Shown here one piece after another: positions 4,824 to 62,522 of a DNA stretch of 64,000 nt. Every line of letters begins with the position of its first letter. Position 1 is the first letter of the stretch. The stretch spans positions 558,001-622,000 of the forward strand of contig NW_026782019.1 in NCBI RefSeq assembly GCF_031769215.1. Direction: 5' to 3'. The notes beneath the pieces were generated by a model. That model made no database searches. It was given only the letters and a program-made list of their open reading frames with translations, and was not told where the DNA came from. This DNA is from Ylistrum balloti (lineage: Eukaryota). The position numbers and the translations under genes were made by a program.

Positions 4824-7685
4824 CTGAAAATGACAAAATCATAAATATTACACAGAAAAGTATAGCATTATACTTTGTAAGAATGATTACTAAATTATTG
4901 TTCTGAGTAAATTAAAATAAACTTGTGTCGAGACATTTCCATTCCAAGCAGGGTCCTTGGACATGTTGTAATAAATGTTCCCTACACAAAAATAAGCCAC
5001 ACGTACGTGAACATTAAGTACGGAATATTGTCCAGGTTATTGATCTATCGGATAACAAATTACATACATTCAACGCCGATGTTTTTTAAGGTAGAAAACA
5101 AATTACTTATTTGGTTTTGAGGTTTTGCATCAACACAACAACATGGATAACAGATTCTAAGACAATGATGAACTCAGTAGCATAACATCCTACAACGGGC
5201 TAATAGAATATCTCACTCCCTTTGTTTAAGATATGGAGCTCAATCCAATTGGGAAATGCTAGATGTTTAAATTTGCAAAGACTGGTCTGGAGGAGTTTTT
5301 ACTAAATGATGTTTTTGAAAAAAAAAACAAGAACCATTTATCTTCTGTGGGTTATGTAAGCGATCTCCATCCACATGGTAAGATTACTAAGTAGCAGAAA
5401 CTCGGCAAGACTCATTATAACCAATACAATAATATCTTTCTCCTATGGGAGTGAAAGTTTCTACTGAACTCCATATCTTCAAAACCTTTTACTTATGCTA
5501 AATGAAGCAAAGTAAATAGTTTCATAAGGAATAGAGAAAAAAATAATTTTGCCGTCATCTCCGATTCATGTAAATTGTTATCACTTTGCTCAATGAATGC
5601 TTAACCATACCTTTTATGTAAGTAATCATATTCACCACCTGATACCGATTCCCCATTTGTACCATCATGGCTGGTATAAAATAGGAATGAAACCATTTAC
5701 TTATCTTTTAATTCTGCCTTAAAAGGACACGATTAGAAGAAAACCTTTCATCTTAAGACGCAGGAAATCTGAATAGAGTGTAAGCCTTTCATCTTCAGAT
5801 TCGTACTTATATTACTGAACAATCTCTTCTGCACCATCGCATCAATTATTAACACAAGATAGTGAGTGTGAAGTATTATGTTTGGATTCAATAGTATGAC
5901 AGCACCTGTGTTCAGCCTCGTGCAAAAACAGTAACCATTCAAGACGTAGTTAAAGTTCAGTGTATTCTTTGACAAAATATAGAAGAATATATCTGGTTTC
6001 ACCGAGTTTTCTGCGATACAAAATTAAAAGCATTAACAGAATGCCGAAATGACTTTACCGTATGAATTTTCTCTCTTTTTATCGAAAATGCTAGTTATTT
6101 ATCAGTTAATAAAAGGACGTTCGAATGATAATTTTTATAACAATTTTGTCGACAGAAAGATGCTTATTTAGGATCACTACGATTTTGAACGTAAGTATTT
6201 TTTGCGATATCATCATTCCTTGATCGGTTTGGGGAATATATTTTTGATAGAGGCAACGTGTCTCCTCGACAGTTTATTGGAATTGTTATGATGGGTTGCA
6301 ACAATTTTATGTATTGCCAATCATTTAATAAGAGAAACATGTAAAAAAATAAAAATAACATCATCGTCAGTGCTTTGTTATATTTATGTTCTTAGAATGG
6401 TGATATTGAACTTGACTGTGTAAAGACAATTATTTCATCATGGAAGATGTTTGCGCTGCACATGCTTCCTGGATTTTGGGTAGACATCTTTTACCTACGA
6501 GACGTTATACACAAAAGACTCTCAATGTGTTGTTTAACATGTGTTAATTATGAAAGAATCAGATAACATTAAATAATATGTGATAAGTTAGGAATACAAT
6601 TTTATAGATATTATAGCACTGTTTTTGTAGAAATGAAAAAAATGAGCGAAATTTCACATTTATTTCAAAAAAAGAAAAGTAAATGGTTTGAATACAGGCC
6701 ATGAACATCAGTGAATATTGATATCTTGCGGTATTTTTCCTTTTACACAATTATGTAATTATTTACCCTTGACATGTTGGCACGCGATGTAATAAAGAAG
6801 GTCGATCGATAAGAAAATAGTATAATGCTTGCTATATAAACTGATAGTTAAAACTTAATTAAGTGTCCGGCTGTCCTACAGATTTCATCGTGTTGGTCGT
6901 TTATTCCCGACAACATGTAATAGAATAACGCTTTGTACGTCTAAATACTCATTTCCGTATCACATGAATACAGATTCTCTCTGCCCACGTGTCTGGGGTA
7001 ATGGTAATGCTAAAATAACAAAGTAATCCATCAGGATTATAGATTCGTATAACCGGTCGGCCTTTCCCTATTTTTGTATGCTAAGTATACATTTCAAATC
7101 AACTTTGCACTCTGTATACCGGGGACTCCTTAATGGCGCGCGCCTGTCTCATTAAGCTTTTCCAGTATGCAAGACAGGTAGGCGCCATTTTGAATTGCCA
7201 GTTCCGGAGGCTAAAAATAAATGTTAGTAGCGTGCTGTCTGGAAAGTTTAAATTAAGAGTAAATTAAGCAGTGCCATTGAAGGAAGTGCTAACATGGAAC
7301 ATCGGGAAAAAACAAATAGCCGCTCTGATATCAGATATATCAGACCTGTGATGTCATTGTTTGCTTTTTTCTAATTATTACTGATTTCATTAGTGAGTAA
7401 ATGATATATCAGTTTTCAATAAGCGACAATTACAATAAACATATCGTTAAATTTGCGATAACCATATCAGAGCATTTCACAGTGTACCGAAAATTAAAAC
7501 GTCTAACATCTTACACGTGACTCGATATAGGATATGAAGAATTTTTTTTACGGTTTTCCAGTAACAAGCATACTATTTTAGCTGTAGCAAGCGTTTATCA
7601 TGCCCAATGATTTGTTGTGTTGGTTCTGATGCTGTTTAATGCTGTTGCTACCGCTGAGGTGGTTACATAAGTGAAATATACTTAC

Positions 7686-9447
7686 TAAATCTGTCGACGA
7701 ACTTTTCTATGCACAACGAATACATGGCACAGGACAGAGAGTACAGAGACATCCCGAACGATCCTAATCGGACCCCCGCTTCATAAAGTTCATGCTTCAC
7801 GCTTCCTACTGGAGCCAAGGGGTCGCCCTCGAATATCGCCTGACCGACAAAGTCTGTGAAGTACAAAGAATAGCAAACCAAGGACATCCAACAGAACAAG
7901 TTAGTCAGACACAAGATGGCAATAGATCGAGGCATGTGGATGATAGACAACAGGTAAGTTTTTAACGTCACTTCCGTCGAGTATGTTACAATATTGTCAA
8001 CTGTCGATTCGGTGATTGCACTAACATTTGCTTTGTCTTTTTCAAGACCAGTATCATCAGAAGATTTTCGGGCTCCACCATTTTGAACCATTAATCCTTC
8101 ATCCAATGAATATTTCCGAGAAGACTTTTTATCGATTGATTGTTTCAATATTTCCCTCGCTTCGTCTTCATTCGTATTATTTCGGCTTTTCCCGAAACTA
8201 CTTCCTGGCTTGCTATCGTCGAATGGCATTTTTCCTTTTCCAGATTTGTTTTCTGTTTTAGCGGCCTCGCCGTTTTCTCGACTGTTAGAAGATCTTATTC
8301 CGGAACTTGAGTGATCAATTACACCTTTTATCGAACTACTTCCGGCTTTAGTTTCATCCAAAGTACCATAGCTTGCAGACATTGTTTGTTTGAGATTCTT
8401 ACTATTTCCTCGAAGCTCGTCTTCCGATTCAGAGGAAGATGTTTCCTCATTCACAAATTTCTTGTATTTTGATTTTCCTTTCTTTTTCTTTTTTCTTTGC
8501 ATTTGTTCCGCCCTACCTCCTCGTAACTCGTCAAGAGGCACCTCCTTAAAACTAGTAACAGTGACTAATACACAGAATACATACGCAATAAGCACCACAG
8601 TGAATACTACTCTCGTGTGACCTCCAAATGATTTCCCGAAATTTGTTTTATTCCAATCTATTCCGCCCATTATGTATCCCACGGAACCTCCAAGACCTGC
8701 CAAAACCGTGAAGGATGTAAGCCCTGCAGAGTGGTCTTCCGCAATACTAATATCCAGTAAGTAGGCCCTACAAGGAGACTGGGCGGCATCACTACTGAAA
8801 TCTAGTAATGCTACACCAAATATTGTTAAAATGATTCCGGACACGTGGTTATCTGGAATTTTGGGAATGTGCCATTCCGAACTTGTAAAATTTCCGAGTT
8901 GCTCTGTTTCCATTTTGTCTAGATTTGTATCGTTATCAGCGTCATTTAAACTGGAATTCAGCGACGTTTTGTTTGTATGATGTGTACCATAGTCTCCGAT
9001 GTATTCACCCAAAGTCTCTCCGTTCGGAACTAATATCAACCCGATGATTATTCCAGCTGATAGTAACAGAATGAAGGGTCTCCGCCGTCCATACTGTAGT
9101 CGACAACGGTCACTCATGGATCCAAGGAGCGGAACAAGAATGAATCCCATCAGAGGACTGACACACCACACAAGTGTCATCAGAGATATAGGGACTCCTA
9201 GTTTGAGTAAGATAGGGCTGACGAAAGCTGTTTCAGCGGCGTAGCACAATTCTATACCACAAACAGCTGCACTAAGTCGCATCAGTTGCCATCTTGATTT
9301 TTTCGTCGCGAGATGCTTGTAATTTGTGTCGCTTCCTGCGTCCATCAAAGTAGTCAACCCCTCGCCAAAGGATATGACGTAAGGTTGTGCCTGATCTGTG
9401 ACTCTTTTGAGGACCTGGATGGTCGAGGTAAGAAGTCCAATCGACAT
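7686..9447 (-). CDS. SLC45: SLC45-family (MATP / proton-associated sugar transporter, lovit-like) MFS transporter, first coding exon. Full CDS join(9447..7686,4823..4648,4031..3816) = 717 aa
   Basis: ATG at 9447 in AAAATG context, 10 nt after an acceptor ttttcag at 9458. Donor TTTA|gtaagt at 7685. Motifs LSAAVCGIELCYAAETAFVSP, GSMSDRCRLQYGRRRPFI, LDFSSDAAQSPCRAYLLD and CWMSLVCYSLYFTDFVGQAIFEGDP are characteristic of SLC45/sucrose-transporter-like proteins. Subfamily (A1-A4) cannot be assigned by eye. Confidence 0.93.
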
Positions 9448-9554
9448 TTTTGCAGATCTGAAAATCATACAGAAAAACATCGAAATAAATAAATTGATGC
9501 ATATAAAAAAACAACAGGGGATATGTCTTAATTTTGGTTGCTAGCCGGCACATA

Positions 9555-11786: not shown

Positions 11787-13454
11787 ATTGTCAGAACTCT
11801 ATTACATATGCTATGCGCAAAGCATTATGGAATTTGAAGACTAAATATAACTGCCTAATTTGCATGTTTTGTAATCAGTCCGTTATGTTCGATCAGAATA
11901 GGGTTACATTTATGAATTATGTAATTTGACATTTTTCGAAACTCAGAGAAATATACTGATCAGTTTTTGGATACAAACTTTGATTTGTATTATGTTTAAT
12001 TCCATCAGAAAATGAACATTTTCTTTAACGGTGACCACCTTAAAAGGAATCGAAATATATATTAGCTTTGTCATGCTATATTTACAATGATAAATGCTTG
12101 GTATCGTTATGATATGACGGGAGGTAAATCAAGTATGTTCACATGATATCAACTATACATGGTCGATGTATTCAAAAGCCTAAGTACGGTCTTACCAGTT
12201 ACAATATTCCCTTGTGTTTTAACAACAGTCCGAATTCATAAGAGAAAATGGAGAGAGAAAAAAATAATAATAAAAAAAAACCAATTTCATCTTGTTTCTG
12301 TCTGGGTTTTATATTAGAACGATCAAATGAAAGATGACACAGTTTTCAATTATTTATAACCTCTATTTGGGTTTCAAATTTACGTTAAGATCTAAAAACC
12401 CCGGAGTAAGCAGTTTACTGAATATAAAAGTACACCATTCCAGTTCAAACTTTCCAAACCTCATCGAGAAATTTAATCTAGAAATAGATGTGAAAAAAAT
12501 ACATCTTAGCGGAAACCGTAGTTCTGCAGCAGAACCCAACCATACGAGTTAGCAACTGACATTTCAAATTGTTTGGTTGCTGCTCTTACGAGCACGAACA
12601 TTACCATATTTAGTTATTCAACGATCGTGCAGACCAGACATAACAATATATTTTTGGAAACTCGAGTCGAGCTCTTTATAGAAAATGATTTCTTTCTTCG
12701 TCAAAACTTCTTAAATTATTCATCAACAAACGTGGGTGATTTCTACATCAAACTTGGGGAAATGTTGGTTCCAAGTGCACAGGAAGTTTTTGATGATGAG
12801 TCAAAAATACATTCCAAGGCTAACAGGAAATCATTATACAAAATCGCTTGCTATAGCCGATAAGCACGTGTCAGCACTCGATAAACGGAACTGCGAGGTG
12901 TGGTAAAGACACATGATATCGGCAAATAGACACATTAACGATGACATGTAAAATAACAAGTTCATTAAACACTGCGAAGGGTGTCCTTTCAAACTTACCG
13001 CTTTATGCAATGTTTCTGCAATCTTGTGGTTTTCACCAAGTGACTAATATCAAATTAATTTGGTATCGATAGTGCAAAAGACGGAAATCAATTCCCAAAT
13101 TATTGTCACAAGAAAACAGTCACTGTCCGCCATAATCAGTAAAAGCGTTACAAATGACCATGTGACCAATCTATATTTCATATCAATATCTCAAATTGGA
13201 AAAATGGAGACGAATGCTAACTCGGTCAGTTTACATCTTATTACCGTTTTCGTATAAATCTTTATACGGCTAATGGGTTTTGCGACATTGACGGATACAA
13301 CTTCCTAGAAACTGTGATGTATAGTGATTGCGTTTGTCAATGGACTTCACAACTGTGCTTGGCTAAAAATAGTTAGTTGATTATCACATGATGATAACGT
13401 GGTAAAGCGTAATTAATATCTAGGAAAACAGGTAAGCATATCTGTTGAGACTAG

Positions 13455-15997
13455 AAGGACGTGGAGTCTATCCAGTACAGGTAAACTCATTTACTATAAG
13501 ACGTGGTGTCTATTCAGTACAGGTATACTCATTTACTAGGACACGTCAGTGTCTATTCAGTACAGTTATACTTATTTACTAGGACACGTCAGTGTCTATT
13601 CAGTACAGGTGTACTCATTTACTAGAAGACGTAGTGTCAATTCAGTACAGGTGTACTAATTTACTAGAAGACGTAGTGTCTATTCAGTACAGGTATACTC
13701 ATTTACTAGGACACGTCAGTGTCTATTCAGTACAGGTGTACTCATTTACTAGAAGACGTGGTGTCTATTCAGGACAGGTATTCTCATTTACTAGGACACG
13801 TCAGTGTCTATTCAGTACAGGTATACTCATTTACTAGGACACGTCAGTGTCTATTCAGTACAGGTATACTCATTTACTAGGACACGTCAGTGTCTATTCA
13901 GTACAGGTATACTCATTTACTAGGACACGTCAGTGTCTATTCAGTACAGTTATACTTATTTACTAGGACACGTCAGTGTCTATTCAGTACAGGTATACTC
14001 ATTTACTAGAAGACGTAGTGTCAATTCAGTACAGCTATACTCATTTACTAGGACACGTCAGTGTCTATTCAGTACAGGTATACTCATTTACTAGGACACG
14101 TCAGTGTCTATTCAGTACAGGTGTACTCATTTACTAGGACACGTCAGTGTCTATTCAGTACAGGTGTACTCATTTACTAGAAGACGTAGTGTCTATTCAG
14201 TACAGGTGTACTCATTTACTAGAAGACGTAGTGTCTATTCAGTACAGGTGTACTCATTTACTAGAAGACGTGATGTCTATTCAGTACAGGTATACTCATT
14301 TACTAGAAGACGTAGTGTCTATTCAGTACAGGTATACTCATTTACTAGGACACGTCAGTGTCTATTCAGTACAGGTGTACTCATTTACTAGAAGACGAAG
14401 TGTCTATTCAGTACAGGTATACTCATTTACTAGAAGACGTAATGTCTATTCAGTACATGTATACTCATTTACTAGAAGACGAAGAGTCTATTCAGTACAG
14501 GTATACTCATTTACTAGTGACAGTACAGTGTCTATTCAGTACAGGTGTACTCATTTACTAGAAGACGTGATGTCTATTCAGTACATGTATACTCATTTAC
14601 TAGAAGACGTGATGTCTATTCAGTACATGTATACTCATTTACTAGAAGACGTAGTGTCTATTCAGTACAGGTGTACTCATTTACTGGAACACGTCAGTGC
14701 TTATTCTGTACAGGTGTACTCATTTACTAGGACACGTCAGTGTCTATTCAGTACAGGTATACTCATTTACTAGAAGACGTAGTGTCTATTCAGTACAGGT
14801 ATACTCATTTACCAGGACACGTCAGTGTCTATTCAGTACAGGTATACTCATTTACTAGGACACGTCAGTGTCTATTCAGTACAGGTGTACTCATTTTCTA
14901 GAAGACGTGGTGTCTATTCAGTACAGGTATACTCATTTACTAGGACACGTCAGTGTCTATTCAGTGCAGGGATACTCATTTACTAGGACACGTCAGTGTC
15001 TATTCAGTACAGGTGTACTCATTTACTAGAAGACGTGGTGTCTATTCAGTACAGGTATACTCATTTACCAGGACACGTCAGTGTCTATTCAGTACAGGTA
15101 TACTCATTTACTAGGACACGTCAGTGTCTATTCAGTACAGGTGTACTCATTTTCTAGAAGACGTGGTGTCTATTCAGTACAGGTATACTCATTTACTAGG
15201 ACACGTCAGTGTCTATTCAGTGCAGGGATACTCATTTACTAGGACACGTCAGTGTCTATTCAGTACAGGTGTACTCATTTACTAGGACACGTCAGTGTCT
15301 ATTCAGTACAGGTGTACTCATTTACTAGAAGACGTAGTGTCTATTCAGTACAGGTGTACTCATTTACTAGAAGACGTGATATCTATTCAGTACAGGTATA
15401 CTCATTTACTAGAAGACGTAGTGTCTATTCAGTACAGGTATACTCATTTACTAGGACACGTCAGTGTCTATTCAGTACAGGTGTACTCATTTACTAGAAG
15501 ACGAAGTGTCTATTCAGTACATGTATACTCATTTACTAGAAGACGTGATGTCTATTCAGTACATGTATACTCATTTACTAGGACACGTCAGTGTCTATTC
15601 AGTACAGGTATACTCACTTACTAGAAGACGTAGTGTCTATTCAGTACAGGTGTACTCATTTACTAGAAGACGTGATGTCTATTCAGTACATGTATACTCA
15701 TTTACTAGAAGACGTGATGTCTATTCAGTACATGTATACTCATTTACTAGAAGACGTAGTGTCTATTCAGTACAGGTGTACTCATTTACTGGAACACGTC
15801 AGTGCTTATTCTGTACAGGTGTACTCATTTACTAGGACACGTCAGTGTCTATTCAGTACAGGTATACTCATTTACTAGAAGACGTACTGTCTATTCAGTA
15901 CAGGTATACTCATTTACTAGAAGACGTACTGTCTATTCAGTACATTTATACTCATTTACTAGGACACGTCAGTATCTATTCAGTACAGGTTTACTCA
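13455..15997. repeat. Minisatellite array, mixed 42/43-nt units, ~59 copies
   Basis: Units GACACGTCAGTGTCTATTCAGTACAGGT(A/G)TACTCATTTACTAG (43 nt) and AAGACGTAGTGTCTATTCAGTACAGGT(A/G)TACTCATTTACTAG (42 nt). The overlapping SIQYRYTHLL ORFs are artefacts. Confidence 0.97.
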
Positions 15998-17439: not shown

Positions 17440-19510
17440 CATCACCATTATTTCTGTCTGTAAATAATCTGTCTTCATACCATACCATTATTTAGCTCTG
17501 TTGTCATACACTGCTGTCGTCCCCACATCACCGCCATCTCTACTATTTCACACTTCCTATCGTCCGCACATGAAGAACACACCTCTTATCTTGTCCCCAT
17601 ATCACCGCCATCTCTACTATTTCACACTTCCTATCATCCGCACATTAAGAACACATCTCTCATCTTGTCCCCACGTTACCACATTCTCTCTTTACAATCT
17701 CACGCTGCCTGTCAACCCAATCCCCACCCTCCCCTTACCACCATGTCCATTAGGTAACACTGTCAATCGTCCCCACATTACCACATTCTCACTTTACTCT
17801 CTCACGCTGCCTGTCGGCCTCATATCACTACTTCTCACTTTTACCTCACAATACCTGTCAACTTAAATAACGACTATCTTTTTTCTATTATTTCACACTT
17901 CCTATCTTCAATACATTACCACCATCTCACTCTATCCTCTTAAGCTTCCTGTCGTCCTCACATAACGATTAGGTCTCTGTATTATATAACGGTTGCTGCC
18001 ATCCCAACATTGCAACCGTCTCCTTCTATCAACTCACAATTCCTGTTAGCCATTATACCACCATCTCTCTTTATTATCTCACGCTGCCTGTCGTCTCCAC
18101 ATTACCACCATCTCTCTTTATTATCTCACGCTGCCTGTTGGCCCCACATTACCACCATCTCTCTTTATCATCTCCCGCTGCCTGTCATCCCTACATTACC
18201 ACCATCTCTCTTTATCATCTCACGCTGCCTGTCATCCCCACATTACCACCATCTCTCTTTATTATCTCACGCTGCCTGTCGTCTCCACATTACCACCAAC
18301 TCTCTTTATTATCTCACGCTGCCTGTCATCCCCACATTACCACCATCTCTCTTTATCATCTCACGCTGCCTGTCATCCCCACATTACCACCAACTCTCTT
18401 TATTATCTCACGCTGCCTGTCATCCCCACATTACCACCATCTCTCTTTATCATCTCCCGCTGCCTGTCATCCCCACATTACCACCATCTCTCTTTATCAT
18501 CTCACGCTGCCCGTCATCCCCACATTACCACCATCTCTCTTTATCATCTCCCGCTGCCTGTCGTCTCCACATTATCACCAACTCTCTTTATTATCTCACG
18601 CTGCCTGTCATCCCCACATTACCACCATCTCTCTTTATCATCTCCCGCTGCCTGTCATCCCTACATTACCACCATCTCTCTTTATCATCTCCCGCTGCCT
18701 GTCGTCTCCACATTACCACCATCTCTCTTTATCATCTCCCGCTGCCTGTCATCCCCACATTACCACCATCTCTCTTTATCATCTCACGCTGCCCGTCATC
18801 CCCACATTACCACCATCTCTCTTTATCATCTCCCGCTGCCTGTCGTCTCCACATTATCACCAACTCTCTTTATTATCTCACGCTGCCTGTTGGCCCCACA
18901 TTACCACCATCTCTCTTTATTATCTCACGCTGCCTGTCATACCCACATTACCACCATCTCTCTTTATCATCTCACGCTGCCTGTCATCCCCACATTACCA
19001 CCATCTCTCTTTATTATCTCACGCTGCCTGTCATCCCCACATTACCACCATCTCTCTTTATCATCTCACGCTGCCCGTCATCCCCACATTACCACCATCT
19101 CTCTTTATCATCTCCCGCTGCCTGTCGTCTCCACATTATCACCAACTCTCTTTATTATCTCATGCTGTCTGTCATCCCCACATTACCACCATCTCTCTTT
19201 ATTATCTCACGCTGCCTGTCGTTCCCACATTACCATTGTTTCCCTGTACAATTATCTCACAATTCCTGCTCTTCTCTTTACCACTATATCTCTCTTTATC
19301 ATATTACAACTCCTGTTGTCCCTGATTACCACCATCTTACAATTCCCTGTCGTCCCCGCATTACCACTATCTCTCTTTACTATCTAACACTTCCTGTTAT
19401 CCCCACATTACCACTATCTCTCTTTACTATCTAATACTTCTTGTCATCCCCACATTACCACTATCTCTCTTTACTATCTAATACTTCCTGTCATCCCCAC
19501 ATCACCACCA
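17440..19510. repeat. Minisatellite array, 47-nt unit; homogeneous core ~18040-19235 with degenerate flanks
   Basis: Unit CATCTCTCTTTATCATCTCACGCTGCCTGTCATCCCCACATTACCAC. The plus strand is strongly C/T-rich and G-poor. Confidence 0.95.
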
Positions 19511-22500
19511 CCACTCTCTATCGTCCTCATCCCCTCCCTTCCCATCTCCTGTTAGCTCTTTCTTTCTACAGTCCTAATACCATTTCCTCATCAGATCGAT
19601 CTAAAAATAAGCCCTTACTCAGCAATATCCTCGGGAATTAACACGGGTTTTATGGAGTTTCAATTATCTTTCCCTATTGACTTTGATATCGGCAGTCACT
19701 ATTATTTATTAAAACAGTGTTTTAATTCTTTCCTACATCATTACACATGTAATAAAAGCACAACTTCGTGACGCACCATTATAGAAACTACCAAATCGGT
19801 TTTATTTTTTTAATTGACGTCATCAAAACCGTACCTCCATCTTCAAAGAAAATATGACATACATGTCCAAGGTCATCTGTTTAGTTGGGAATTACTCTGT
19901 AATTTCTTAGTGTATTCGCATCAGAAACGAGAAAATATTCAGGACGTCGTGAGCTAGTACTTAGAACTGACGAAATCATTACCAGCATCTAAAGCTCGTT
20001 GATATTAGAAATCACCTGGACGACGCCTCCGTATCCGTCAATATTTCTGAACGAAAGAATAATTGCCATGTTATACCACAGTTGAAGTATTCTTGCTGTT
20101 CGTTAGAGTTTTTTTTCCAATAGAATAATGATACTGGTATTTATACATAAGCGTCAGTTTGCAATGAATAGTGCTTTTGGTTTTGAACGTCGGCTGTGAA
20201 TTTTTGTTTGTTTTTGTTTTTTTGTTTTTTTTGTTTGTTTGGTTTTTTTGTTTTGTTTTGTTTTATTTATTTATTTTTTTTTTACTTGAAAAAAACACGC
20301 ATACGTGTTCTAGATAATCACATATGTCCTGTGTTTTGTGAAGACAGCGATATGAAACCAGAAGAAACGTCCTTGGGTATGTATTTGACAGAAAACTTTA
20401 TAATACACTTGCTTCTGTCCTCGTTTTCACAAGAAAGCGGGACGGGGGCTTCACTTACATAGCTGAGCAAAGCGAATGATCCAGACATATAATATAATGT
20501 AATTTTAAAACAATTGACCTTAATTGTTTCACTCCATTTAATCCCGTAAACTTCTTCCATTCTCAAGATACCTACACTAACTCAAACGGAATAAAAGTGC
20601 AGGCTTCATTCAGGAAGGAGACCTTCAGCTAAGTTTGTTAAGCCTCATTTGCAATCATCACCACATTCGAGCGCCCTTAGAGGTCTGCTACAATTAATCA
20701 TGCTGTCTGTTTCAAATTACCACACTACCGTTCTAGCATTACAACCCATCGGAAACCTCAAAACTTGGTAATGATTGATGCAGTGATGAACATTCTCTCT
20801 ATACTGTTGAAAGAATAAGTATAATGATTTCTAGGTTTGTGTTCATTAATAATTCTTCAATTACTGATCAGCTTTGCTTGTTGTCTGAAGTACGCCATGA
20901 ATGACAAACGAGTATTCGCAACGAGGTGACGGAATCGAAAGCTCCTCACTCGAAGACGAATACAGCCGATAAACGGATTAACGACGCGCGCCGAAACGTA
21001 TGTTCATTTATGACAAAATAGCGCTAACCACTTAATGTAGATCAAGTCTTGGAGAGGCCTTTGGATGTACAAACTAATTTCGGTAAGGTACAATTGATTT
21101 AAATTTGAGCAAATCCCATAAAAGCAACATATTCTATATTACGTGTCTCCTCTTGGTAAGGGAAGGTCATAGCATTGCGGATGTTAGCGTAATGCGTAAC
21201 TCTTAATGTTTAAATAGGAATACCTTGTCTACATCGACAGCGGCCGAGTTGGCGGACGTGGTTGTAAAGCTGTGGTCACCCTTTCAAAATGATTTCCGGG
21301 GAAGACACTACGTCTTAGAAATGCATGGGGAAACTGACAGACTGTGTGATGATAAGGTGAACTATTTATCACGAAGTATTTTATTCCTTATATGCTGTAT
21401 GTTATTGGTCTTTTATCTGAAATTGTATTTTATACTACTTCAATGCTTTGTAATGTTCATGTACTTCGCATGATTAAAGAATCATTTCTCATTCACATAC
21501 GTTTTTATGTAAAATAAATAAATAGATAAATAAATGCTATGTTTATCGGCAGTCATTCGAACACATACTTATATGGAACATCTAAGTTACAATTAATGGT
21601 TTTAAACCATGGGCTAGAGTGTCTACAGGTTGATGTAGTCGGGTCTGATCGGGCCTTAGAGACATGGACAGAACGAGACAGGGAGGAAAGACAGGGCACT
21701 ACATCACTGATATCTACACGGTACATGAGATTAAGCAGTTTGGTTTAGAAATATTTTTTACATTTTGAGATTTTTTTTTAAATGCAAGCTTTCGAAAACG
21801 TGTTTTTCCTTCATTAAGCAAGGGTTGCAACTATTCGGAGAATGGACGAAAATGTAATCAGCTGTTAAATTGTCACGACATATCTTCGTTCCAATGACAC
21901 GCTTCTGCTGTAGACAGTCTGAGCACGTTGATGTATCATTAATTTCACCCCTTATTTGGGATCTAAATGGGATGATGAGTTTCAGATAAGCATCTTCTTG
22001 AAATCCGCGATCTGTGTGAGGATAGTGGTAAATTCCTAAAAAATGCGTGAATTGTTTTCGTGACAAAAACGATTTTTCCTGTTATGGCTGTAGACCCAGA
22101 GTCTGACTGACGCCTTTCATTATATAAAGTCATCGGAATAGGGCACAAAACAAATGGTTTTTTGTTTGTTTTTTTTTCGTATTGTGTTTCAAAGCACACA
22201 CGGCGATACTGAAGTTTGGTGATATTTTAATAGTTGAATTAGAAACAGGCGGTGTTAATGTTTTCCATGCCACTAGTTACAGGTGAAAAATGAACTGTAA
22301 GTAACTGTCAGGTATTCAAACCATGAAAATGCTAATAAGCTGGTAGCTTGATGTACTGCAACGAGTTTTAACCAATGGCGATCAAAGAGATCAACCTAAT
22401 TAACAGATATCGTCTCCTTCGTGGCAGTGCTGGGTATATGTACTGACAACAGAAAATACCGCACTGTTAAATTCTATTATATCAGATTTGGTGTTAATTT

Positions 22501-26500: not shown

Positions 26501-26906
26501 ACATTCTGTATCCCTGATTGGCCGTATGTTTTATCAGCCACAAATAGATATACAGAATAGATGTACACTATATGTAAAAGCATTTGAACAAATCTACCCT
26601 TGTGTGGTCTTCCTTGGATATTGGCATCAGATTTGAATAATAGATGTTTGATATCCTAGGTAAAGTTTGTAAAATAAAATGACTTAATTCTTTAAAATAT
26701 TGTTTTACATTCCTTTTCTCGTTATATTGACCTGTCAATGTACTTATATAGACCTATCTAGTGTTAATTCGTTATGTCATCTTTTGTTTTGTCCTTCTGC
26801 TTAATCCCTATGTTAGTTGTGTAGAATTACACAGGCACACAGGAGATATTAGCACCACCTACACAAATATAGTTACATACAGAAAGGTCAAAAAGGAGTT
26901 AAACAA

Positions 26907-27730
26907 CATCATACAGTTGTTTCGTCCTTCTAAGACTCATCAGTGATGCTACATCACACAGTTGTTTCGTCCTTCTAAGACTCATCAGTGATGATACATC
27001 ATACAGTTGTTTCGTCCTTCTAAGACTCATCAGTGATGCTACATCATACAACTGTTTCGTCCTACTAAGACTCATCAGTGATACTAAATCATCAGTGGCG
27101 CTACATCACACAGTTGTTTCGTCCTTCATCAGTGATGACTCATCAGTGATGCTACATCATACAACTGTTTCGTCCTACTAAGACTCATCAGTGATACTAA
27201 ATCATACAGTTGTTTCGTCCTTCTAGGACTCATCAGTGATGCTACATCACACAGTTGTTTCGTCCTCCTAAGACTCATCAGTGATGATACATCATACAGT
27301 TGTTTCGTCCTTCTAAGACTCATCAGTGATGCTACATTATACAGTTGTTTCGTCCTTCTAAGACTCATCAGTGATGCTGTGTCATACAACTGTTTCGTCC
27401 TTCTAGGACTTATCAGTGATGCTACATCATACAACTGTTCGTCCTTCTAGGACTCATCAGTGATGCTACATCATACAGTTGTTTCGTCCTTCTAAGACTC
27501 ATCAGTGATGCTACATCATACAACTGTTTCGTCCTACTAAGACTTATCAGTGATGCTACATCATACAGTTGTTTCGTCCTTCTAGGACTCATCAGTGATG
27601 CTACATCATACAACTGTTTCGTCCTTCTAGGACTCATCAGTGATGCTACATCATACAGTTGTTTCGTCCTTCTAGGACTCATCAGTGATGCTACATCATA
27701 CAACTGTTTTGTCCTTCTAGGACTCATCAG
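26907..27730 (-). ncRNA. Tandem array of 18 ~45-nt minimal hammerhead ribozyme units
   Basis: Minus-strand unit is UGAUG-UAG-CAUCA-CUGAUGA-GUC(C/U)-UAGAA-GGAC-GAAAC-(AACU|AGUU)-GUA. It contains the full catalytic core, a 4-bp stem II, a 5-bp stem I and a GUA cleavage triplet in the correct order. Activity is not demonstrated. Confidence 0.88.
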
Positions 27731-28949
27731 TTATTTTAATTGTCTAAATCATCAAATGTAGGAGGCGACCGAGAGGAAATATAAAATGATCGGAACAAAA
27801 GTCATAACCTACAATGGGAGTTAATGAATAAAGCCTCAGAATTCAACAAAGCTACATGTCGTTTTTACTTAAATAGGCTAGATAGCGACTAAAAAAACAG
27901 CGACTGAAAATAAACAGCGACTGAAAATAAACAGCGAAAATAAACATAAATATCAAAATAATAAACAAGAATTACTTGTGTCTAGTTCAACGGTACCTCA
28001 GGTACTGAATCAAGAGCTAGGTGACGTACGTAAAGTGCGGTACATGAATATAAAGTACCGTCAGCTTAACAAGTTTTGAACCCTGCTTGTTCAATAGTGA
28101 TAACAATATGATATATATGCGATTCCTGTTACGTTATTCCCAAGGTACACTGTTTGAAATTTCTATTATATTTCAATTTAATATATCTTTTTTAGCTATA
28201 AGTATGTTATAGCACATGATAAAGTTAACAGAGTATGCATTATATTTTCTGAAAATGGTTAATTTTGACCTATAAAAATTTTAAAAAAGGTTATTTGGCT
28301 ATGTCTTTTCTCACATATTAAGCCACGTATCGATACTAGTGTTTCCTTATACAGAACAATATCGTCATATCTAGTTTTGCTATTAACAGGTCAAAGAAAT
28401 AATCATTATTTCAACAAATAAGTAAAAAAATAGTTAAAAAACCAAAATTGTAAAAAATATTTATCATAATCCTAGGCTAACAATGCACTGCTTACCCGGG
28501 CGAATGTCAATTCATAATTTATACGTTCCTACTATAGCACGTAAATCTCCCAATCTTTTCTACTTTGATCATGAGACAGGAAAACAAGCACGTGATGTTC
28601 AGATATGTAACATACTATACAATATTGATAATCAATATATGTACATGTGTATTAAATAAACACACGCGTATTAACCATGTGTAATTCTATCATCGTACAC
28701 GGGGAAAAATCTAGATCAGTAGCGATACAATAGTTTCACGATATTTATGTTTGATAAGGATTGCGACAGGGAATTGCGGTATTGTAAATAACCTTGTCTT
28801 TACATTAAAGCAATATTTGTTTAGATACGTTGCAGTTATGGGGAAAATCATTAAAGAAAATACCGACAAGTAGACTGAATCTTAATTCAAACCTATACTG
28901 GAGGGGGAAAGACGACAGAATACTCTTTTTTAAGAAGAAAAGAAAAATA

Positions 28950-47571: not shown

Positions 47572-48699
47572 CTATTTTTTACAAAGCAATGCCATGCGAA
47601 ATTCTTTTATAAGCCATACATAAAGGATGGGGTTTATGACTGGATGTAGCAGTGGCAAAATTGATAAAATACCCTCTGCTGCACGTGCCTCAGAAACACC
47701 AATAAGTATTAATATTCGAACAACGGAGAGAGGAACAAAGGAGACAAACAAACATAACTGGACCAATGTCACAGTTTTCAGTGCATCACTGAGTTTGCGA
47801 ATATTACATGTTTCTTTTCTGAGAATTTTTGTTTCCCTAGCTGAAGGTATTCCATCAGCTGATGATCTTGTGGTTGTGGTCACTCTGACCGAGAAAACCC
47901 TTACAGGGGGCACAACGCGTGTTCTGTTAAGGTGATTCTCGTAACTATGGTAACCAGCAGATGTGTTTTCATGAGAGCACGATTCTTCGCGAAACTTTGT
48001 GTTTACTGTAGTTGTTGTTAGACCTTCTCCATTGACGTTTTCATTGTCATCCGAGCCTCGCATTACAGATTCGTTGTTTGTGAAACTTACTTGCTTCATT
48101 CGTTTTTGCAACCGATATGCAGCGACGGCGTATAAAACGAGTGTAAGAAACACTAGCGGAATGAAAAGCACCTGTGTACCCAAACTTAATCCGAAATAGT
48201 TCGCATTGTTATACATAAAAGCGACAACACAACCAATGAATGAACCTGTTATTGGAAAAGAAATTACAAGACCCACAGAGTATATTGAAAGGATAAGCCA
48301 AGCTGATAATAAGACTGCATACTTTTTGAGACCTTGAAATGCCCGGATATACGTAGATGACGCGCTGATAGCAAGAACTCTTTCAAGTGAAATAATAAAT
48401 GCTTGAAGTAAAGACGTTCCGAAGCAAACAACACTTGCTGTGTACGTGAATAAGCAAAATCCTTTGCTATACATTTTCAAATTGAATCGAGCGCTGATGA
48501 TGAGGATTACGATGAAAGAGGACAAAAAGTCACTGCAGCTGAGACTTAGTGTAAAGATAACATGGGGTCGTTGCCGGAGAAGCGGTCTGGTAAAAAGAAG
48601 GACTACAACCACACCATTCTCTATCAACCCAATCGTTGACAACATTAATACGACGTACGTCCCGATACCAATGGCTGATCCTGTCCTTGACGTGACATT
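47572..48699 (-). CDS. Orphan class A (rhodopsin-like) GPCR 1, main coding exon. Predicted CDS join(54943..54920,48699..47572) = 383 aa
   Basis: Seven hydrophobic segments with TM1 GLIEN, TM2 LSCSDFL, TM3 ISLERVLAI, Cys residues at the top of TM3 and in ECL2, and TM7 HPVINPILYVW. Acceptor tttttttcag|AAT at 48700, phase 0. The ORF-track start MIFIGIFVFFQ is intronic polypyrimidine sequence. Confidence 0.9.
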   Translation of the reverse strand, partial: NVTSRTGSAIGIGTYVVLMLSTIGLIENGVVVVLLFTRPLLRQRPHVIFTLSLSCSDFLSSFIVILIISARFNLKMYSKGFCLFTYTASVVCFGTSLLQAFIISLERVLAISASSTYIRAFQGLKKYAVLLSAWLILSIYSVGLVISFPITGSFIGCVVAFMYNNANYFGLSLGTQVLFIPLVFLTLVLYAVAAYRLQKRMKQVSFTNNESVMRGSDDNENVNGEGLTTTTVNTKFREESCSHENTSAGYHSYENHLNRTRVVPPVRVFSVRVTTTTRSSADGIPSARETKILRKETCNIRKLSDALKTVTLVQLCLFVSFVPLSVVRILILIGVSEARAAEGILSILPLLHPVINPILYVWLIKEFRMALLCKK

Positions 48700-49866
48700 C
48701 TGAAAAAAGACAAAAATGCCGATAAATATCAAGTGAACTTAATATAATGTAAAAAAATAAATATTGACTGAAAACGATATGCAAGATCTGAAAAGGATGG
48801 CGAGAAGTATCAAGAATTGCAGGAGTTGCAAGATATTTTTGATCAAATGAAAACAAAATACAACAGTTACAGACAAGAAAACATTAATGAGAGAAATCCG
48901 TGGGCGATTCTGATTGACTTGCCAGTACTTCTTACTGACTCCAGTCGGTCAAAGAACAGAGAGGAAAGTGAACATTTGATTTTGTCATGGATTGCTGGTA
49001 AAGGGCTAACAAACAAACCTGGAGAAAAAAGTGTACCTTGTATGTCACCTTTCGTAAAATGTTAACAAAGGAGACAGACAATTATGTAATGAAAGCTTGC
49101 CATGACCAAGAATATCAAATAATGTCGAATGAAATAGAAAGATACAATAAAAATCAAAACTCTTTGACAGTAATGTTTAAACTTCTAGGATAATAAGACT
49201 CATATAAGTTAATAGACCAAATCCTATGATATGAATATAAGGCAATGTTGTCTAATACACTCCAATGAAGGAAGATTACATAGATATAGATAGAAAGTTT
49301 TGGTTTGTAACACTAAAAACGGTATTTGTACGAAGGTAATAGTTCGTGTTCTAAGTTTAACGTTGGAAGTTGAACAATCAAGAATATTGCTAGACCAGAC
49401 AGACTGAAATTCATTCCACTCTCAAACGTCCATGCTATACTTTGTAACGAGTCAGGTATCTATAAAAATTTGTATTTTCGTTGTCGAGGTATATTTAAAT
49501 TTCTCGAATTTGACTAATGTAAAACAGTTGTGTAATCTCTGTATATACATAAGATTTGCTTTCAAGAAGCTTAAGACGGTATTATCAGCTGGCTCTGGTG
49601 TGCTAATGCGAATATACATGTGTGTTTTTGTTCAATTTTCACAGATCTGTACAATGACATATCTCTGCTTATCTTGTCAATAGGCAATGTAGTTTCTGTC
49701 ATACAGGAAACAGAAATTGAATTGTCATTGACATACAAAACTTCATTTCCTAACATCAAGTGAAGTTTGACAAGACGATGAGCAGACCACCATGACCAGA
49801 CCAGAACTTCTTTACAGTGTTCAAAACATCAAATGGACAGACAAAATGAAGAAACATCCGTTAAAC

Positions 49867-55003: not shown

Positions 55004-57675
55004 GCTTATCGATCGGTCAGACAGGTGATGCAGTCTCTCTTAATCTCCTGAAATGCGAGACTTTTTTCGTGCTCGGATTTTTTTCCCTTTCGTTTACAAA
55101 GGGACCGGAAGGAGAATTTTCCTTAAAGTTACTTTAGTTATGAACGGAACTTAATCACTTTTCGCGATAAGAAGAAACACGGCAAATGACAAAATGTGAA
55201 GAAGTGTTTTGTTTTTGTTCTTTTCGTTTTTGTTTTTGTTTTTTCGTTTTTGTTGTTGTTTTTTTTTTTTTTGACGCTATTCAAAGCTACTTTTGAAAAA
55301 GATAACAAATTTGGAAATGACACCAACTACATATCATGTATACCTCAACGGATTCGACACTTTAGTATGTACACTTCTCTTGAGTTCAAAAGATGAGATT
55401 GAAAAGAAAATTGTATAACGCTTTCGTAATGGTCTCCTTGTCCTTATTACACGACAAAGGAAAGTTCCCAATCTAAAGCAAGGTATCCATGTACTACACC
55501 GTCTAATCATTTAACAATAAACAAAATCATGAAAAGTTAAGAAATATAGGTTCTCGGTAATAGAAACTATTTAAAATATTCAAAGTAAAGGATATAATCA
55601 GCTGTTTCGATAAAGGGGAAACTTTTATTTACCGTTATAATTACAAAAAGATAGTATACAGATGCTTGATTTTTATATGGAGGTTAATTACATGTACTTA
55701 ACAAATGTTCTGCGTCGCTTATTGTGAGATTATGTATAAAGGGAGCCTGTTACACAATGAATACGATAACGTGAGCGAGTTCTCGTGCTGAAGGTGTGAC
55801 ATCGTACATCATGTTTCCAATATTTATCAGGATTACACAAGCGGATCTCTATGAACGGAAATTTTAGTATTACTGAACTTAAAAGTTTAAAAAAGTGTAC
55901 ATCTCCCTGATTCAAATATTTCTAAGGAGAAAAGACTTGGTATAACATTAAGATCATGATCCTTACTGCTGCAGAAAAGATGACGGGACACAGTCATCAT
56001 GACAAACGTTATGTACTAAGAGAAATTCAGAGACCTGCTCCAGGGTATCAGTACATACAAGTGTTGAAAAGGATTCTACATTCAAGTGTACCATATTATT
56101 GCTTATAGAAGACTTAAAGACAATGTAACTTCACATGTACAGCACAGATAGCTCTACTGTATATCCACTAAGAGTACCAATTAACCCTAAATACACAAAC
56201 TTCAAGTTTCTCTCAGGCCCAAATTATCATCTGCTTACTCTATCTACATGTACAATGTGAATATAGATTTATAGCTAATTTAATGCCAACATAAGGAGGG
56301 AAATCACAGTATGATATTAAGAGTAGTGCAGGCTAAGGTAAGAAGCTGGGTGAGAGCAAGCTTTCTTCTGACGCAGTGTTTTTCGATATTACATTACACC
56401 TCGCATGTGTTCCTTTGGCATAGAGCATCGGAATAATCAATGAGAAATTGGAAATTGACAGCATTTTCTCCGAAAGGACTTCTAGCTCTCCCTCTCTCCA
56501 ACACAGATTACAGATGTTTTAAAACAGCCAGTAGTGTCTTCCCTTTCGGCATCCAAATTCTGAGTTCATTTGATCCAAGCCATCAGACATACGTTAAATC
56601 AAAACAGTGGACGGTACCACTGACTGTCATCCTATATCAGCATGAGACAGTCAAATTTAGTTAACGTCAATGTTTATGTCTATCGGGCAGTTCTTCTGTT
56701 TCAGTTATACATATGTTTTAATTATTTCGAAATATGTTAATACATTTCAATCAAATACAGAATTATTATAATGTTTTCTTCCGCCAATTAAGACTTTTAA
56801 AATGTTTTCAAAATATAACCCTGCTAAAGCAGCACCTAGCAATGGCTGATTTTCATGAAACTTGACTAAAAGAAATAAATATTTATACCTCCGCAACGGG
56901 TTTGTTAAGAAAGTAAATATTTCCAAAAAACGTGGTCCGGCGGGGACATGACGAAATAGCAGCGAAGAAACACATGGCACGGCAGTACCGACAGTCACAT
57001 CCTAATTCTGATAATCTCTTTGAGTTGTTGTGCAATTTATCCCTGTGATGGACTCGTGACGTGACAGAAAACACTGAGATAATCCGATTTAGTAATTTTA
57101 TGTCATATTAACCAGAATTTAAATCGGATGAGTTGTATGTTGTTTACCAAATCAACAGATTATGACATTGCAAAGCATACCGTCAGCTACCCATTACATA
57201 CCTTTGAAAAACCACCAGTGTGTTTCTGTAAGACCAAATCGATTCTGTTGAGTGACGTGATAACAATCTATTATGTTACCATAGCAGATAAATTGCCATT
57301 TATCTATGTCATCAATTTCGATATGCGTGGATGTTGATCTTTGAAGGTATAATCTTAGTTGATATTGATGAGAATTCGGTCAAATATAACCAGTATGATG
57401 GTTGCCATTTATTGCTGAAAGAGAAAAAAACACAACAATTAATTGAACTAGGTTTTTATTGCTATACTAGATCTTGTTTCATCGTTTTGCTTATATATCC
57501 CAAACATATAATAAAGTCAATTATTTTGATATTTGAAATAGCTAGATAGATTCTAAAACGTTCTGAGGTAATACTGATTAGTAATTTGATAGATTACTGA
57601 AAAAAGAATGATACCGGAAGAGTGGGCAACATTTTGATCATATTGCTGACCATGAGCGCGCCAATACAAATACAT

Positions 57676-61439: not shown

Positions 61440-62522
61440 TTAAGATAATAACTCCTTTCTCAATCCTTTAATCCGCCAGACATATAGAAGTGGATTAACT
61501 AAAGGATGTGCCATAATTAATAATCTTGTAGTTAACTCTAATACCGGTAAATGAATGTGTGCCAACTTTAACATCTGTATAACCATGTGTGGGATAAAGG
61601 TGAAGAACAATACTACCAGAATAATGAGAACTGTGGTTAAAGCAGTCTTCAGTTTGTCTGTCCGCTTAGAACATCGGACTCCGTGTTTGAAGATTGCGCC
61701 GAGCATTAATGGTGGTTGAGTCTGTGGATTATCATGAAATGGAGTTTTAGGTTGAACGTCGTTTTTAAAATGTGACGAGAGTGGTTTAAGACTTGGGGGT
61801 TTGAATTTTAATCTTAAATGTGTGTAATTACTGGGAATGGCGTCTAACTTGGCTATAAGAGGATTTCTCTCATAAGCATCGCGTTGATGTTTCCTAAGTA
61901 ATCGTGTCAGTGTACAAACAGCCGTAGAATACAGTAGAATGGTTAATATCACTAAAGGTAGAACAATGATGAGCTGAGTCAAAACAAGGATGATCAGCAT
62001 GTTAACATAAGAATACATCCTTTCAAGTTTACAACGGTTATAATTTCCGGTAGTGTTAAAACTGCTGATAATGATCACAACGTAACAGATCAGAAGAACA
62101 GTCGATATAAACGGGGTGTAATATTTTGATTTCCCGGCAAAAATGGAATGAGTTCGACATTTCACAGCGTTGAATCTCTCTAGAGATATCAGGAAGCAGA
62201 GGAACAGGGAACTCCCAAAGAATGCCACCCATCCGGTATAGATCATTTCACAAAATGATTTCGACGGAATTAATTTGGTGTATATCGGTATGTAATACAC
62301 AAGGTTAGTACTACAAACAAGCAAATCACTGAAGCTCAGGCAAAGGATGAAAAACTCATGAGCACGTTTCCTCAGCTTCGGTCTTAAAATTAAAAGAATA
62401 ACCACAACGATGTTCTCGATGAAGCCAATTATCTGCATACATAAACCAACAGCTTCCGGAATGGGATAGGTTACTGCGTCTTCTATATGATACTCTGTTT
62501 GGTTCCATGGCGTCTGTGGTTT
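61440..62522 (-). CDS. Orphan class A GPCR 2, main coding exon. Predicted CDS join(63077..63075,62522..61440) = 361 aa
   Basis: TM1 GFIEN, TM2 LSFSDLL, TM3 ISLERFNAV and TM7 HPLVNPLLYVW. The frame stays open 28 codons upstream of the ORF-track ATG (KPQTPWNQTEYHIEDAVTYPIPEAVGLC, with an NQT sequon), back to acceptor ttacag|AAA at 62523. Confidence 0.9.
   Translation of the reverse strand, partial: KPQTPWNQTEYHIEDAVTYPIPEAVGLCMQIIGFIENIVVVILLILRPKLRKRAHEFFILCLSFSDLLVCSTNLVYYIPIYTKLIPSKSFCEMIYTGWVAFFGSSLFLCFLISLERFNAVKCRTHSIFAGKSKYYTPFISTVLLICYVVIIISSFNTTGNYNRCKLERMYSYVNMLIILVLTQLIIVLPLVILTILLYSTAVCTLTRLLRKHQRDAYERNPLIAKLDAIPSNYTHLRLKFKPPSLKPLSSHFKNDVQPKTPFHDNPQTQPPLMLGAIFKHGVRCSKRTDKLKTALTTVLIILVVLFFTFIPHMVIQMLKLAHIHLPVLELTTRLLIMAHPLVNPLLYVWRIKGLRKELLS

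What the first reader, a model, noticed from the sequence alone, without database searches (positions are those of the whole stretch)
27425..27730. Two complementary unit variants alternate so that neighbours complete stem III (heterodimeric ribozyme design)
Seen: the 4 nt between GAAAC and GUA are either AACU (type A) or AGUU (type B), which are exact reverse complements. Left-to-right order of the 18 units is A A A B A B A A A A B B A B A B A B, strictly alternating from unit 12 onward. An A/B pair gives a perfect 8-bp stem III (ACAACUGU/ACAGUUGU); A/A or B/B pairs give only 3 bp next to the core. At least five junctions (18/17, 17/16, 16/15, 14/13, 4/3) have an intact core, GUA, full stems I and II and the 8-bp stem III. 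Other units carry inactivating changes (GUG site, CUGAUAA, GAAC). Dimeric minimal hammerheads as I recall them use a self-complementary linker; a two-allele complementary system forming a 90-nt higher-order repeat is not something I recognise as described (inference).
Basis: partly seen in the sequence, partly recalled or inferred. Interest (0 to 1): 0.85.

Follow-up and report, generated by a model that had tools for sequence, protein, structure and literature searches.

The report
Hammerhead array with two complementary linkers
A 0.8-kb repeat in an animal (reportedly scallop) genome is 18 back-to-back copies of a 45-base self-cutting hammerhead RNA whose connecting stem comes in two mutually complementary versions, but these are most likely two mirror-image decay mutations of the family's usual self-complementary stem, arranged by ordinary DNA block duplication and not by design.

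Summary
On the minus strand, 26899-27730 holds 18 linker-bearing 45-nt hammerhead units. A/B junctions give an 8-bp stem III; one scores above Rfam's Hammerhead_3 threshold. Model folding gives A/B junctions 0.92 for the hammerhead fold, A/A 0.16 and B/B 0.07.

The "design" reading is weak:
- Contigs from four organisms show this very abundant family mostly carries ACAGCUGU, a perfect palindrome, which is the known homodimer (double-hammerhead) design.
- A and B are the two possible G:C-to-A:T transitions of its central GC, so they are reverse complements by symmetry. 17 of 20 window-versus-family differences are of that type.
- Alternation is not significant (11/17 heterotypic junctions, P=0.16; run of 7, P=0.10).
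- The order follows block duplications: (BA)x3, and about three copies of an AAAB 180-nt block.
- About a third of the units carry inactivating changes, at roughly the density expected without selection.

No RNA data or other phased arrays could be obtained. Other notes in this scan report many such arrays in this genome, one with complementary stem III variants. Compensatory selection remains possible (about 0.2).

The parts
26899..27730 (-). Whole array: 17 full or near-full 45-nt hammerhead units plus two internal fragments (27133-27146, 27079-27095) and one unit with its stem II half deleted (27096-27132). There are 18 linkers in all.
27417..27730 (-). Strictly alternating part, B A B A B A B (units r1-r7). 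r1-r4 are identical apart from the linker and a G12-to-A change in r1. r5 has G8-to-A. r7 lacks one A of GAAAC.
27611..27661 (-). Junction hammerhead (type III view). It comprises the A linker with its GUA site, the stem I hairpin, CUGAUGA, stem II, GAA and the B linker. It is the only hit above Rfam's gathering score.
   Evidence: RF00008, 51.6 bits against a threshold of 48.5
27655..27662 (-). Example of an A-type linker, ACAACUGU. The other A linkers end at + coordinates 27572, 27482, 27348, 27303, 27258, 27213, 27117, 27010, 26965 and 26920. The family majority here reads C at 27659, giving ACAGCUGU.
27610..27617 (-). Example of a B-type linker, ACAGUUGU. The other B linkers end at 27707, 27527, 27438, 27393, 27168 and 27055. 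Part of the family reads G at 27613, giving ACAGCUGU.
26899..27326 (-). About three copies of a 4-unit (180-nt) higher-order block A-A-A-B, marked by shared private variants: loop 1 U, the GUG site, the UUUAGU stem I, and the loop 2 U. The second copy carries deletions.
   Evidence: variant table; (TRF periods 158 and 113)
27731..27765 (-). Upstream flank (minus sense). It resembles the end of the 'body' of the dispersed repeat that flanks this hammerhead elsewhere in the genome.
   Evidence: loose ends, depth 7886 against about 14 for unique DNA; 50 of 2000 shuffles score as well
26864..26905 (-). Downstream flank (minus sense). It resembles the start of the same repeat body.
   Evidence: depth 363 against 13.8; 12 of 2000 shuffles score as well

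Best explanation
This is a locally expanded, slowly decaying minisatellite. Its unit is the 45-nt type I hammerhead module of a very abundant dispersed or tandem repeat family of retrozyme-like kind. The family's stem III region is ACAGCUGU, a 2-bp stem with the palindromic tetraloop AGCU, which is the classic arrangement that lets two copies in one transcript merge their stems III into a double hammerhead. In this array the central GC of that palindrome suffered the two possible G:C-to-A:T transitions, one on each DNA strand: AGCU to AACU (A) and AGCU to AGUU (B). Because the parent is a palindrome, these two products are necessarily reverse complements. Their order, (BA)x3 followed by an AAAB block repeated about three times, was laid down by DNA-level duplication of multi-unit blocks through unequal exchange or slippage. 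If the minus strand is transcribed, A/B neighbours would still fold into a competent junction hammerhead and homotypic neighbours would fold poorly. That is a by-product and not a selected two-allele system. Shown here: the anatomy, the family consensus, the block structure, the lack of statistical support for alternation, and the model energies. Inferred: neutrality, and the DNA-level mechanism.
For:: in Logan contigs of four organisms the majority letter at the linker positions restores + strand ACAGCTGT. At 27659 T>C takes 87, 96, 86 and 91% of depth. 27479 T>C, and 27434 and 27051 A>G, take 92-93% in X1. 17 of the 20 places where the window differs from the family majority have A or T in the window and G or C in the family. 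Thousands of contigs were laid per run, so this is a huge family.
heterotypic junctions 11 of 17 (P=0.16) and longest alternating run 7 (P=0.10). Shared private variants show 180-nt AAAB blocks. r1-r4 are identical except for the linker.
inactivating changes are G12A, G8A twice, a lost A in GAAAC, GUG three times, and two deletion fragments. That is about 4-5 of roughly 15 substitution events at essential positions, near the 27-36% expected without constraint.
the flanks match the family body ends, so the array sits inside one element copy.
PxP, AxB and PxB all fold equally well (0.91-0.92), so A/B offers no gain over the ancestral design.
the literature describes palindromic loop 3 and double hammerheads in tandem repeats.
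Against: No unit of the array keeps the ancestral AGCU, and none has a linker other than A or B. Both derived forms therefore replaced the parent together, which is what compensatory evolution would also give. Every strictly alternating junction is predicted to fold and homotypic ones are not, so RNA-level selection cannot be excluded. Another first-stage note (s1-249781) reports complementary stem III variants in a different array of this genome, and s1-232037 reports 90-bp dimers. Recurrence would favour function. The family-wide shares rest on k=31 contigs placed on a repeat, so they are rough.
Confidence: 0.7

Rival explanations
1. Compensated heterotypic double hammerhead. The array, or its source lineage, was under selection for self-cleavage of its transcript. 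After one transition weakened stem III, the mirror transition in the neighbouring unit restored a perfect 8-bp helix, and the A-B pair (90 nt) became the amplified functional unit.
For: AxB restores the fold to the ancestral level while AxA and BxB drop to 0.16 and 0.07. All 18 linkers are A or B, with no other variant and no AGCU left. The best Rfam hit is an A-to-B junction. Six heterotypic junctions have an intact core, site and stems. Unchecked notes of similar patterns elsewhere in the genome came up.
Against: Alternation is not significant. An AAAB block with two A-A junctions was itself amplified. Two of the six junctions in the alternating run, and the B-B junction after it, have dead cores (G8A twice, lost A). 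The mirror relation follows from palindrome symmetry plus G:C-to-A:T bias without any selection. There is no expression evidence.
Confidence: 0.2
2. The alternating part was made by rolling-circle reverse transcription of a small (90-nt) A-B circular RNA, in the way proposed for retrozyme circles, and not by DNA duplication.
For: Retrozyme RNAs circularise and are thought to be copied as circles (PMC7229834; abstract of 10.64898/2026.07.22.740005). r1-r4 form two near-identical BA dimers.
Against: The array lies between diverged body ends of one element copy, with single-copy DNA beyond them, and I noticed no obvious poly-A tail next to the array. The rest of the array shows 180-nt blocks, partial units and slippage-type deletions typical of DNA-level turnover. 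Described circles are 170-400 nt.
Confidence: 0.06
3. Assembly artefact: the A/B order is a mis-assembly of a collapsed repeat.
For: Short-read contigs do not span the array interior (table 8).
Against: Both flanks and array edges are reproduced without differences in an independent-looking run (records 1 and 8). The units carry many private variants that give a consistent block structure.
Confidence: 0.04

Closest known systems
Double hammerhead of newt satellite 2 and ASBV (Forster et al. 1988, as cited in PMC4209133 and PMC6466107)
   Same: Hammerheads with a 1-2 bp stem III and a short loop are inactive alone. In a multimeric transcript, two copies merge their stems III into one long helix with two active sites. 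The junction hammerhead here is that same fold seen from inside.
   Different: In those cases the loop is palindromic, so any two copies pair as a homodimer. Here the two loop variants are not self-complementary and only pair with each other. The unit is 45 nt with no spacer, against about 330 nt.
Type I hammerheads of invertebrate non-LTR retrozymes (Cervera and de la Pena 2020, PMC7229834)
   Same: The family consensus fits: helix III of 2 bp capped by a tetraloop, low G+C, tandem or dispersed short repeats, and very high copy number. Most genomic copies in related runs carry a body of a few hundred nt next to the hammerhead (loose ends).
   Different: This array has lost the body completely. 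The repeat unit is the ribozyme alone, well below the 170-400 nt described. No RNA or circle evidence was obtained.
Minimal dimeric hammerheads of Penelope-like elements (Cervera and de la Pena 2014, PMC4209133; Lunse et al. 2017, known to me only through citations)
   Same: A small hammerhead that needs a second copy to build stem III, with palindromic 15.2-16.2 and loop 3.
   Different: Those sit in pLTRs flanking an RT/GIY-YIG ORF and have a long helix II with a bulge. No such ORF occurs in this 64-kb window, and helix II here is 5 bp.
Higher-order repeats of ordinary satellite DNA
   Same: Multi-unit blocks (90 and 180 nt) marked by private variants are amplified as units, which creates periodic patterns of variants without selection.
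   Different: Here the variant that marks the period also changes the predicted RNA pairing between neighbouring units.

Membership tests
Hammerhead ribozyme | Conserved core C3-U4-G5-A6-N7-G8-A9, G12-A13-A14, an A15.1-U16.1 pair, and cleavage site H17 that is not G | tested here: met
   Present in most units. There are 17 pattern matches against 0 expected. Individual units are broken by G8A, G12A, a lost A, or GUG.
Hammerhead ribozyme | Three helices around the core, recognised by the curated covariance model | tested here: met
   RF00008 scores 51.6 bits, above its 48.5-bit gathering score, at 27611-27661 on the minus strand. Further junctions score 36.9-47.1 bits, below threshold.
Hammerhead ribozyme | Self-cleavage activity | not testable with these tools
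   No RNA run was obtained. One search used only contigs and found no end pile-ups.
Double (dimeric) hammerhead | Unstable stem III in the single motif (1-2 bp plus a short loop) | tested here: met
   The stem III region is AC-NNNN-GU, 2 bp with a tetraloop.
Double (dimeric) hammerhead | Palindromic loop 3 that allows two like copies to pair | tested here: not met
   Neither AACU nor AGUU is a Watson-Crick palindrome. The family majority AGCU is. A/B pairs give 8 bp.
Double (dimeric) hammerhead | Tandem arrangement so that two motifs share one transcript | tested here: met
   Head-to-tail 45-nt units. Transcription itself was not tested.
Non-LTR retrozyme | Tandem repeat of about 170-400 nt, each with one type I hammerhead | tested here: not met
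   The unit here is 45 nt. Only about 35-nt remnants of a body are present at the two flanks.
Non-LTR retrozyme | Expressed as linear and circular RNA | not testable with these tools
   No RNA data were obtained.
Penelope-like element pLTR hammerhead | Lies in direct repeats that flank an RT plus GIY-YIG ORF | tested here: not met
   The ORFs of 130 aa or more in the window are an MFS transporter, two rhodopsin-type receptors and satellite read-throughs. Shorter or intron-split RT remnants were not searched for.

The most novel reading that the evidence does not exclude
The A and B linkers are a compensated pair kept by selection on RNA. On this reading it is a natural hetero-double-hammerhead in which a unit can only be cut with the help of the other variant next to it, so the working and amplifying unit is a 90-nt A-B dimer. 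The pattern would then recur in other arrays of this scallop-type satellite. That would be covariation between neighbouring repeat units, giving direct in-genome evidence that these spacer-less arrays act as RNA.
Probability: 0.17. Interest if true: 0.62.

Novelty: new member of a known kind. Interest (0 to 1): 0.3.

Why it matters
If the heterotypic pairing were selected, it would show covariation in trans between adjacent repeat units. That would be good evidence that the abundant 45-nt hammerhead arrays of this genome are transcribed and self-processed, and it would be the first natural obligate heterodimeric hammerhead. As it stands, the case shows how a palindrome under G:C-to-A:T mutation pressure automatically produces mutually complementary variants, and how block duplication can then make them look designed. 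This matters as a caution for the many similar arrays flagged in this genome.

Tried and rejected
(1) I translated the in-frame ORF across the array (27422-27727, minus strand) to fish for other arrays among predicted proteins. No candidate was found, so no contigs could be fetched.

(2) I ran exact-pattern scans of metagenome and viral contigs. These gave only seven single hammerheads with the same stem II and unrelated flanks, and no arrays.

(3) The look-up of sequencing runs with kind 'any' returned only contig-level, mostly DNA runs. No raw RNA reads were available, so cleavage-site ends could not be examined.

(4) Contigs at k=31 cannot phase linkers 45 nt apart, so genome-wide A/B adjacency could not be counted.

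(5) I looked for an asymmetry of B over A, which would suggest G.U tolerance at the RNA level. I rejected it as unreliable because contig placement among near-identical units is arbitrary.

(6) I tested whether the 42-nt (13450-15997) and 44-nt (57675-60132) satellites in the window are hammerhead-derived. Neither has an Rfam hit at E<=1.

(7) Lunse et al. 2017 (PMC5785218) is not held. Its content is used only through citing reviews.

(8) I compared core intactness at heterotypic junctions (6 of about 9) with homotypic junctions (3 of 6). The numbers are too few to tell.

Full report
**What is there.** On the minus strand, window 26899-27730 is a head-to-tail array of a 45-nt unit. Each unit reads CUGAUGA, then GUCC(U)UAGAAGGAC (stem II), then GAAAC, then 4 nt, then GUA, then UGAUGUAGCAUCA (stem I hairpin). 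A pattern for the core plus stem II matches 17 times against 0 expected. Rfam's type III hammerhead model scores 51.6 bits (threshold 48.5) at 27661..27611. That hit runs from one linker, through the GUA site, stem I, core and stem II, to the next linker. With relaxed thresholds, further junctions score 36.9-47.1 bits.

All 18 linkers are ACAACUGU (A, 11 units) or ACAGUUGU (B, 7 units).

**Pairing.** A with B gives eight Watson-Crick pairs (-8.7 kcal/mol). A with A gives 3+3 pairs around two A.C mismatches (-1.0). B with B gives eight pairs including a tandem G.U (-3.4), so 'only 3 bp' is not exact for B/B. In 53-nt junction constructs that differ only in their linkers, the probability of the core-proximal stem III pairs is as follows:
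- 0.92 for A-B and B-A.
- 0.92 for the palindromic parent with itself.
- 0.91-0.92 for the parent with B.
- 0.52-0.81 for the parent with A.
- 0.16 for A-A.
- 0.07 for B-B.

The six-unit alternating transcript folds better than shuffles (z = -4.7), and its first junction adopts the hammerhead fold in the minimum-energy structure. The physical claim, that heterotypic neighbours complete stem III and homotypic ones do so poorly, therefore holds in the model.

**What the family looks like.** I laid Logan contigs of four runs from four coded organisms on 26700-27900. This placed 12,927, 1,105, 5,164 and 4,889 contigs on the array, with summed word depths up to about 1.3 million against about 14 for the single-copy flanks. 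The family is therefore huge and shared among species.

At the linkers, the majority letter differs from the window. At 27659 T>C takes 87, 96, 86 and 91% of depth. At 27479 T>C takes 68-96%. At 27434 and 27051 A>G takes 92-93% in X1, and at 27613 A>G takes 27%. Each of these changes restores + strand ACAGCTGT, that is RNA ACAGCUGU, a perfect 8-nt palindrome. This is the design described for metazoan type I hammerheads: a helix III of 1-2 bp capped by a 2-4 nt palindromic loop, working as a double hammerhead in tandem repeats (PMC4209133; PMC6765202; PMC6466107; PMC7229834).

The other recurrent difference, every 45 nt (27636, 27591 and so on), is U for C at the free core position N7. On the + strand this is a CpG-to-CpA change. 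Overall, 17 of the 20 places where the window differs from the family majority have A or T in the window and G or C in the family.

**Why A and B are reverse complements.** AGCU has one G and one C. The G-to-A transition gives AACU, and the C-to-U transition gives AGUU. At the DNA level these are the same C-to-T change on the two strands of a palindrome. Their products must therefore be mirror images. Under the G:C-to-A:T drift this array shows, A and B are the two expected first-step variants of the loop. The exact complementarity therefore needs no selection.

**Order of the units.** Shuffling 11 A and 7 B gives at least 11 heterotypic junctions in 16% of trials, and an alternating run of at least 7 in 10%. 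The junctions are also not independent. Private variants show that r10-r13, r14-r17 (with deletions) and r18-r20 are copies of one four-unit block: A (loop 1 U), A (GUG), A (UUUAGU stem I), B (loop 2 U). This matches TRF's periods of 158 and 113. That block carries two A-A junctions and was still amplified. In the alternating part, r1-r4 are identical except for the linker and one G12A change, as expected for a recently doubled 90-nt BA pair. Both linkers occur on both the C and U backgrounds at stem II position 11, which points to exchange between units.

**Constraint.** Six linker-bearing units carry an inactivating point change: r1 (G12A), r5 and r8 (G8A), r7 (a lost A) and r11 and r19 (GUG). 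r15 has GUG together with a deleted stem II half, and there are two deletion fragments. Counted as events, about 4-5 of roughly 15 substitutions hit essential positions. That is close to the 27-36% of the unit that is essential, so no purifying selection is visible since the expansion (my count).

**Setting.** The flanks just outside the array align to the sequences that, in other genomic copies, continue from the two ends of the hammerhead. These are the 'loose ends' of about 255 nt. Shuffles reach the observed scores in 50 of 2000 and 12 of 2000 trials. Beyond about 35 nt on each side the DNA is single-copy. The array is therefore a tandem expansion of the 45-nt ribozyme module inside one copy of a dispersed repeat. 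This agrees with earlier notes of this scan on other arrays. The ORFs of 130 aa or more in the window are an MFS transporter, two rhodopsin-type receptors and satellite read-throughs, with no Penelope-type RT among them. Earlier notes name the genome as a scallop (Ylistrum balloti). I did not test that.

**What speaks for function.** No AGCU unit and no third linker variant survive among the 18 units, so both derived forms replaced the parent together. Six heterotypic junctions are fully intact. Two unchecked first-stage notes mention complementary stem III variants (s1-249781) and 90-bp dimers (s1-232037) in other arrays. I could not reach other arrays: the protein-based and pattern-based searches of public collections were blank or unrelated, k=31 contigs cannot phase neighbouring linkers, and no RNA reads were available. 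The literature library holds nothing on heterotypic double hammerheads or on scallop hammerheads.

**Verdict.** The pattern is real, and its predicted consequence for RNA folding is real. The best explanation (0.7) is neutral: two mirror-image decay mutations of the family's palindromic stem III, arranged by DNA block duplication in a partly dead array. Compensatory selection for a heterotypic double hammerhead remains possible (about 0.2), and a genome-wide census of adjacent linkers would decide it. Other reports of this scan had already found the 45-nt hammerhead arrays themselves on other DNA of this genome.

Noticed in passing
window 27636, 27591, 27546 and so on (every 45 nt): All units of this array have U at the free core position N7 (CUGAUGA), where about 92% of the family depth has C (CUGACGA). 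On the + strand this is a CpG-to-CpA change, so the whole array descends from a founder that had already lost that CpG.
   Followed up: partly
window 26700-27900 versus runs X1, X6, X8, X9: The hammerhead family is present at very high depth in four differently coded organisms. In X1 only 1% of the laid sequence runs on into unlike DNA, suggesting that much of the family there is in spacer-less array form. In X8 and X9 many copies have a longer loop 1 (GAUGUUAGGGACAUC type) and further linker variants, seen as + strand ACATCTGT and ACATTTGT.
   Followed up: partly
window 13450-15997: A 42-nt satellite of about 60 copies with a 128-nt higher-order period. Its unit shares CTAG...GTCAGTG...TACAG with the + strand of the hammerhead unit, but no Rfam hit appears at E<=1.
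   Followed up: partly
window 57675-60132: A 44-nt satellite of about 56 copies at 79% identity, with 105- to 138-nt higher-order periods. No Rfam hit.
   Followed up: partly
window 17770-19521: A 47-nt satellite of about 38 copies that creates spurious long ORFs (18010-19434 and others).
   Followed up: no
window 27884-27937: A short 17-nt tandem repeat (AGCGACTGAAAATAAAC, 3.3 copies) about 150 nt upstream (minus sense) of the array.
   Followed up: no
window 47572-48732 and 61440-62438 (minus); 7663-9480 (minus): Two intron-less rhodopsin-family receptor ORFs (Pfam 7tm_1, E 8e-19 and 4e-21) and one ORF with an MFS transporter match. These are ordinary animal genes near the array.
   Followed up: partly
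L001-L007 (metagenome and viral contigs): Seven single hammerhead-like motifs with the very same stem II (GUCCUAGNAGGAC) in unrelated microbial or viral contigs. L004 and L007 are the same 55-kb contig. Their flanks are unrelated to this window's family.
   Followed up: partly
window 27133-27146 and 27079-27095: Two partial units that look like slippage deletions between the repeated UGAUGA words of the core and stem I. The same word identity (core UGAUG equals stem I strand UGAUG) also allows misfolding in long transcripts.
   Followed up: no
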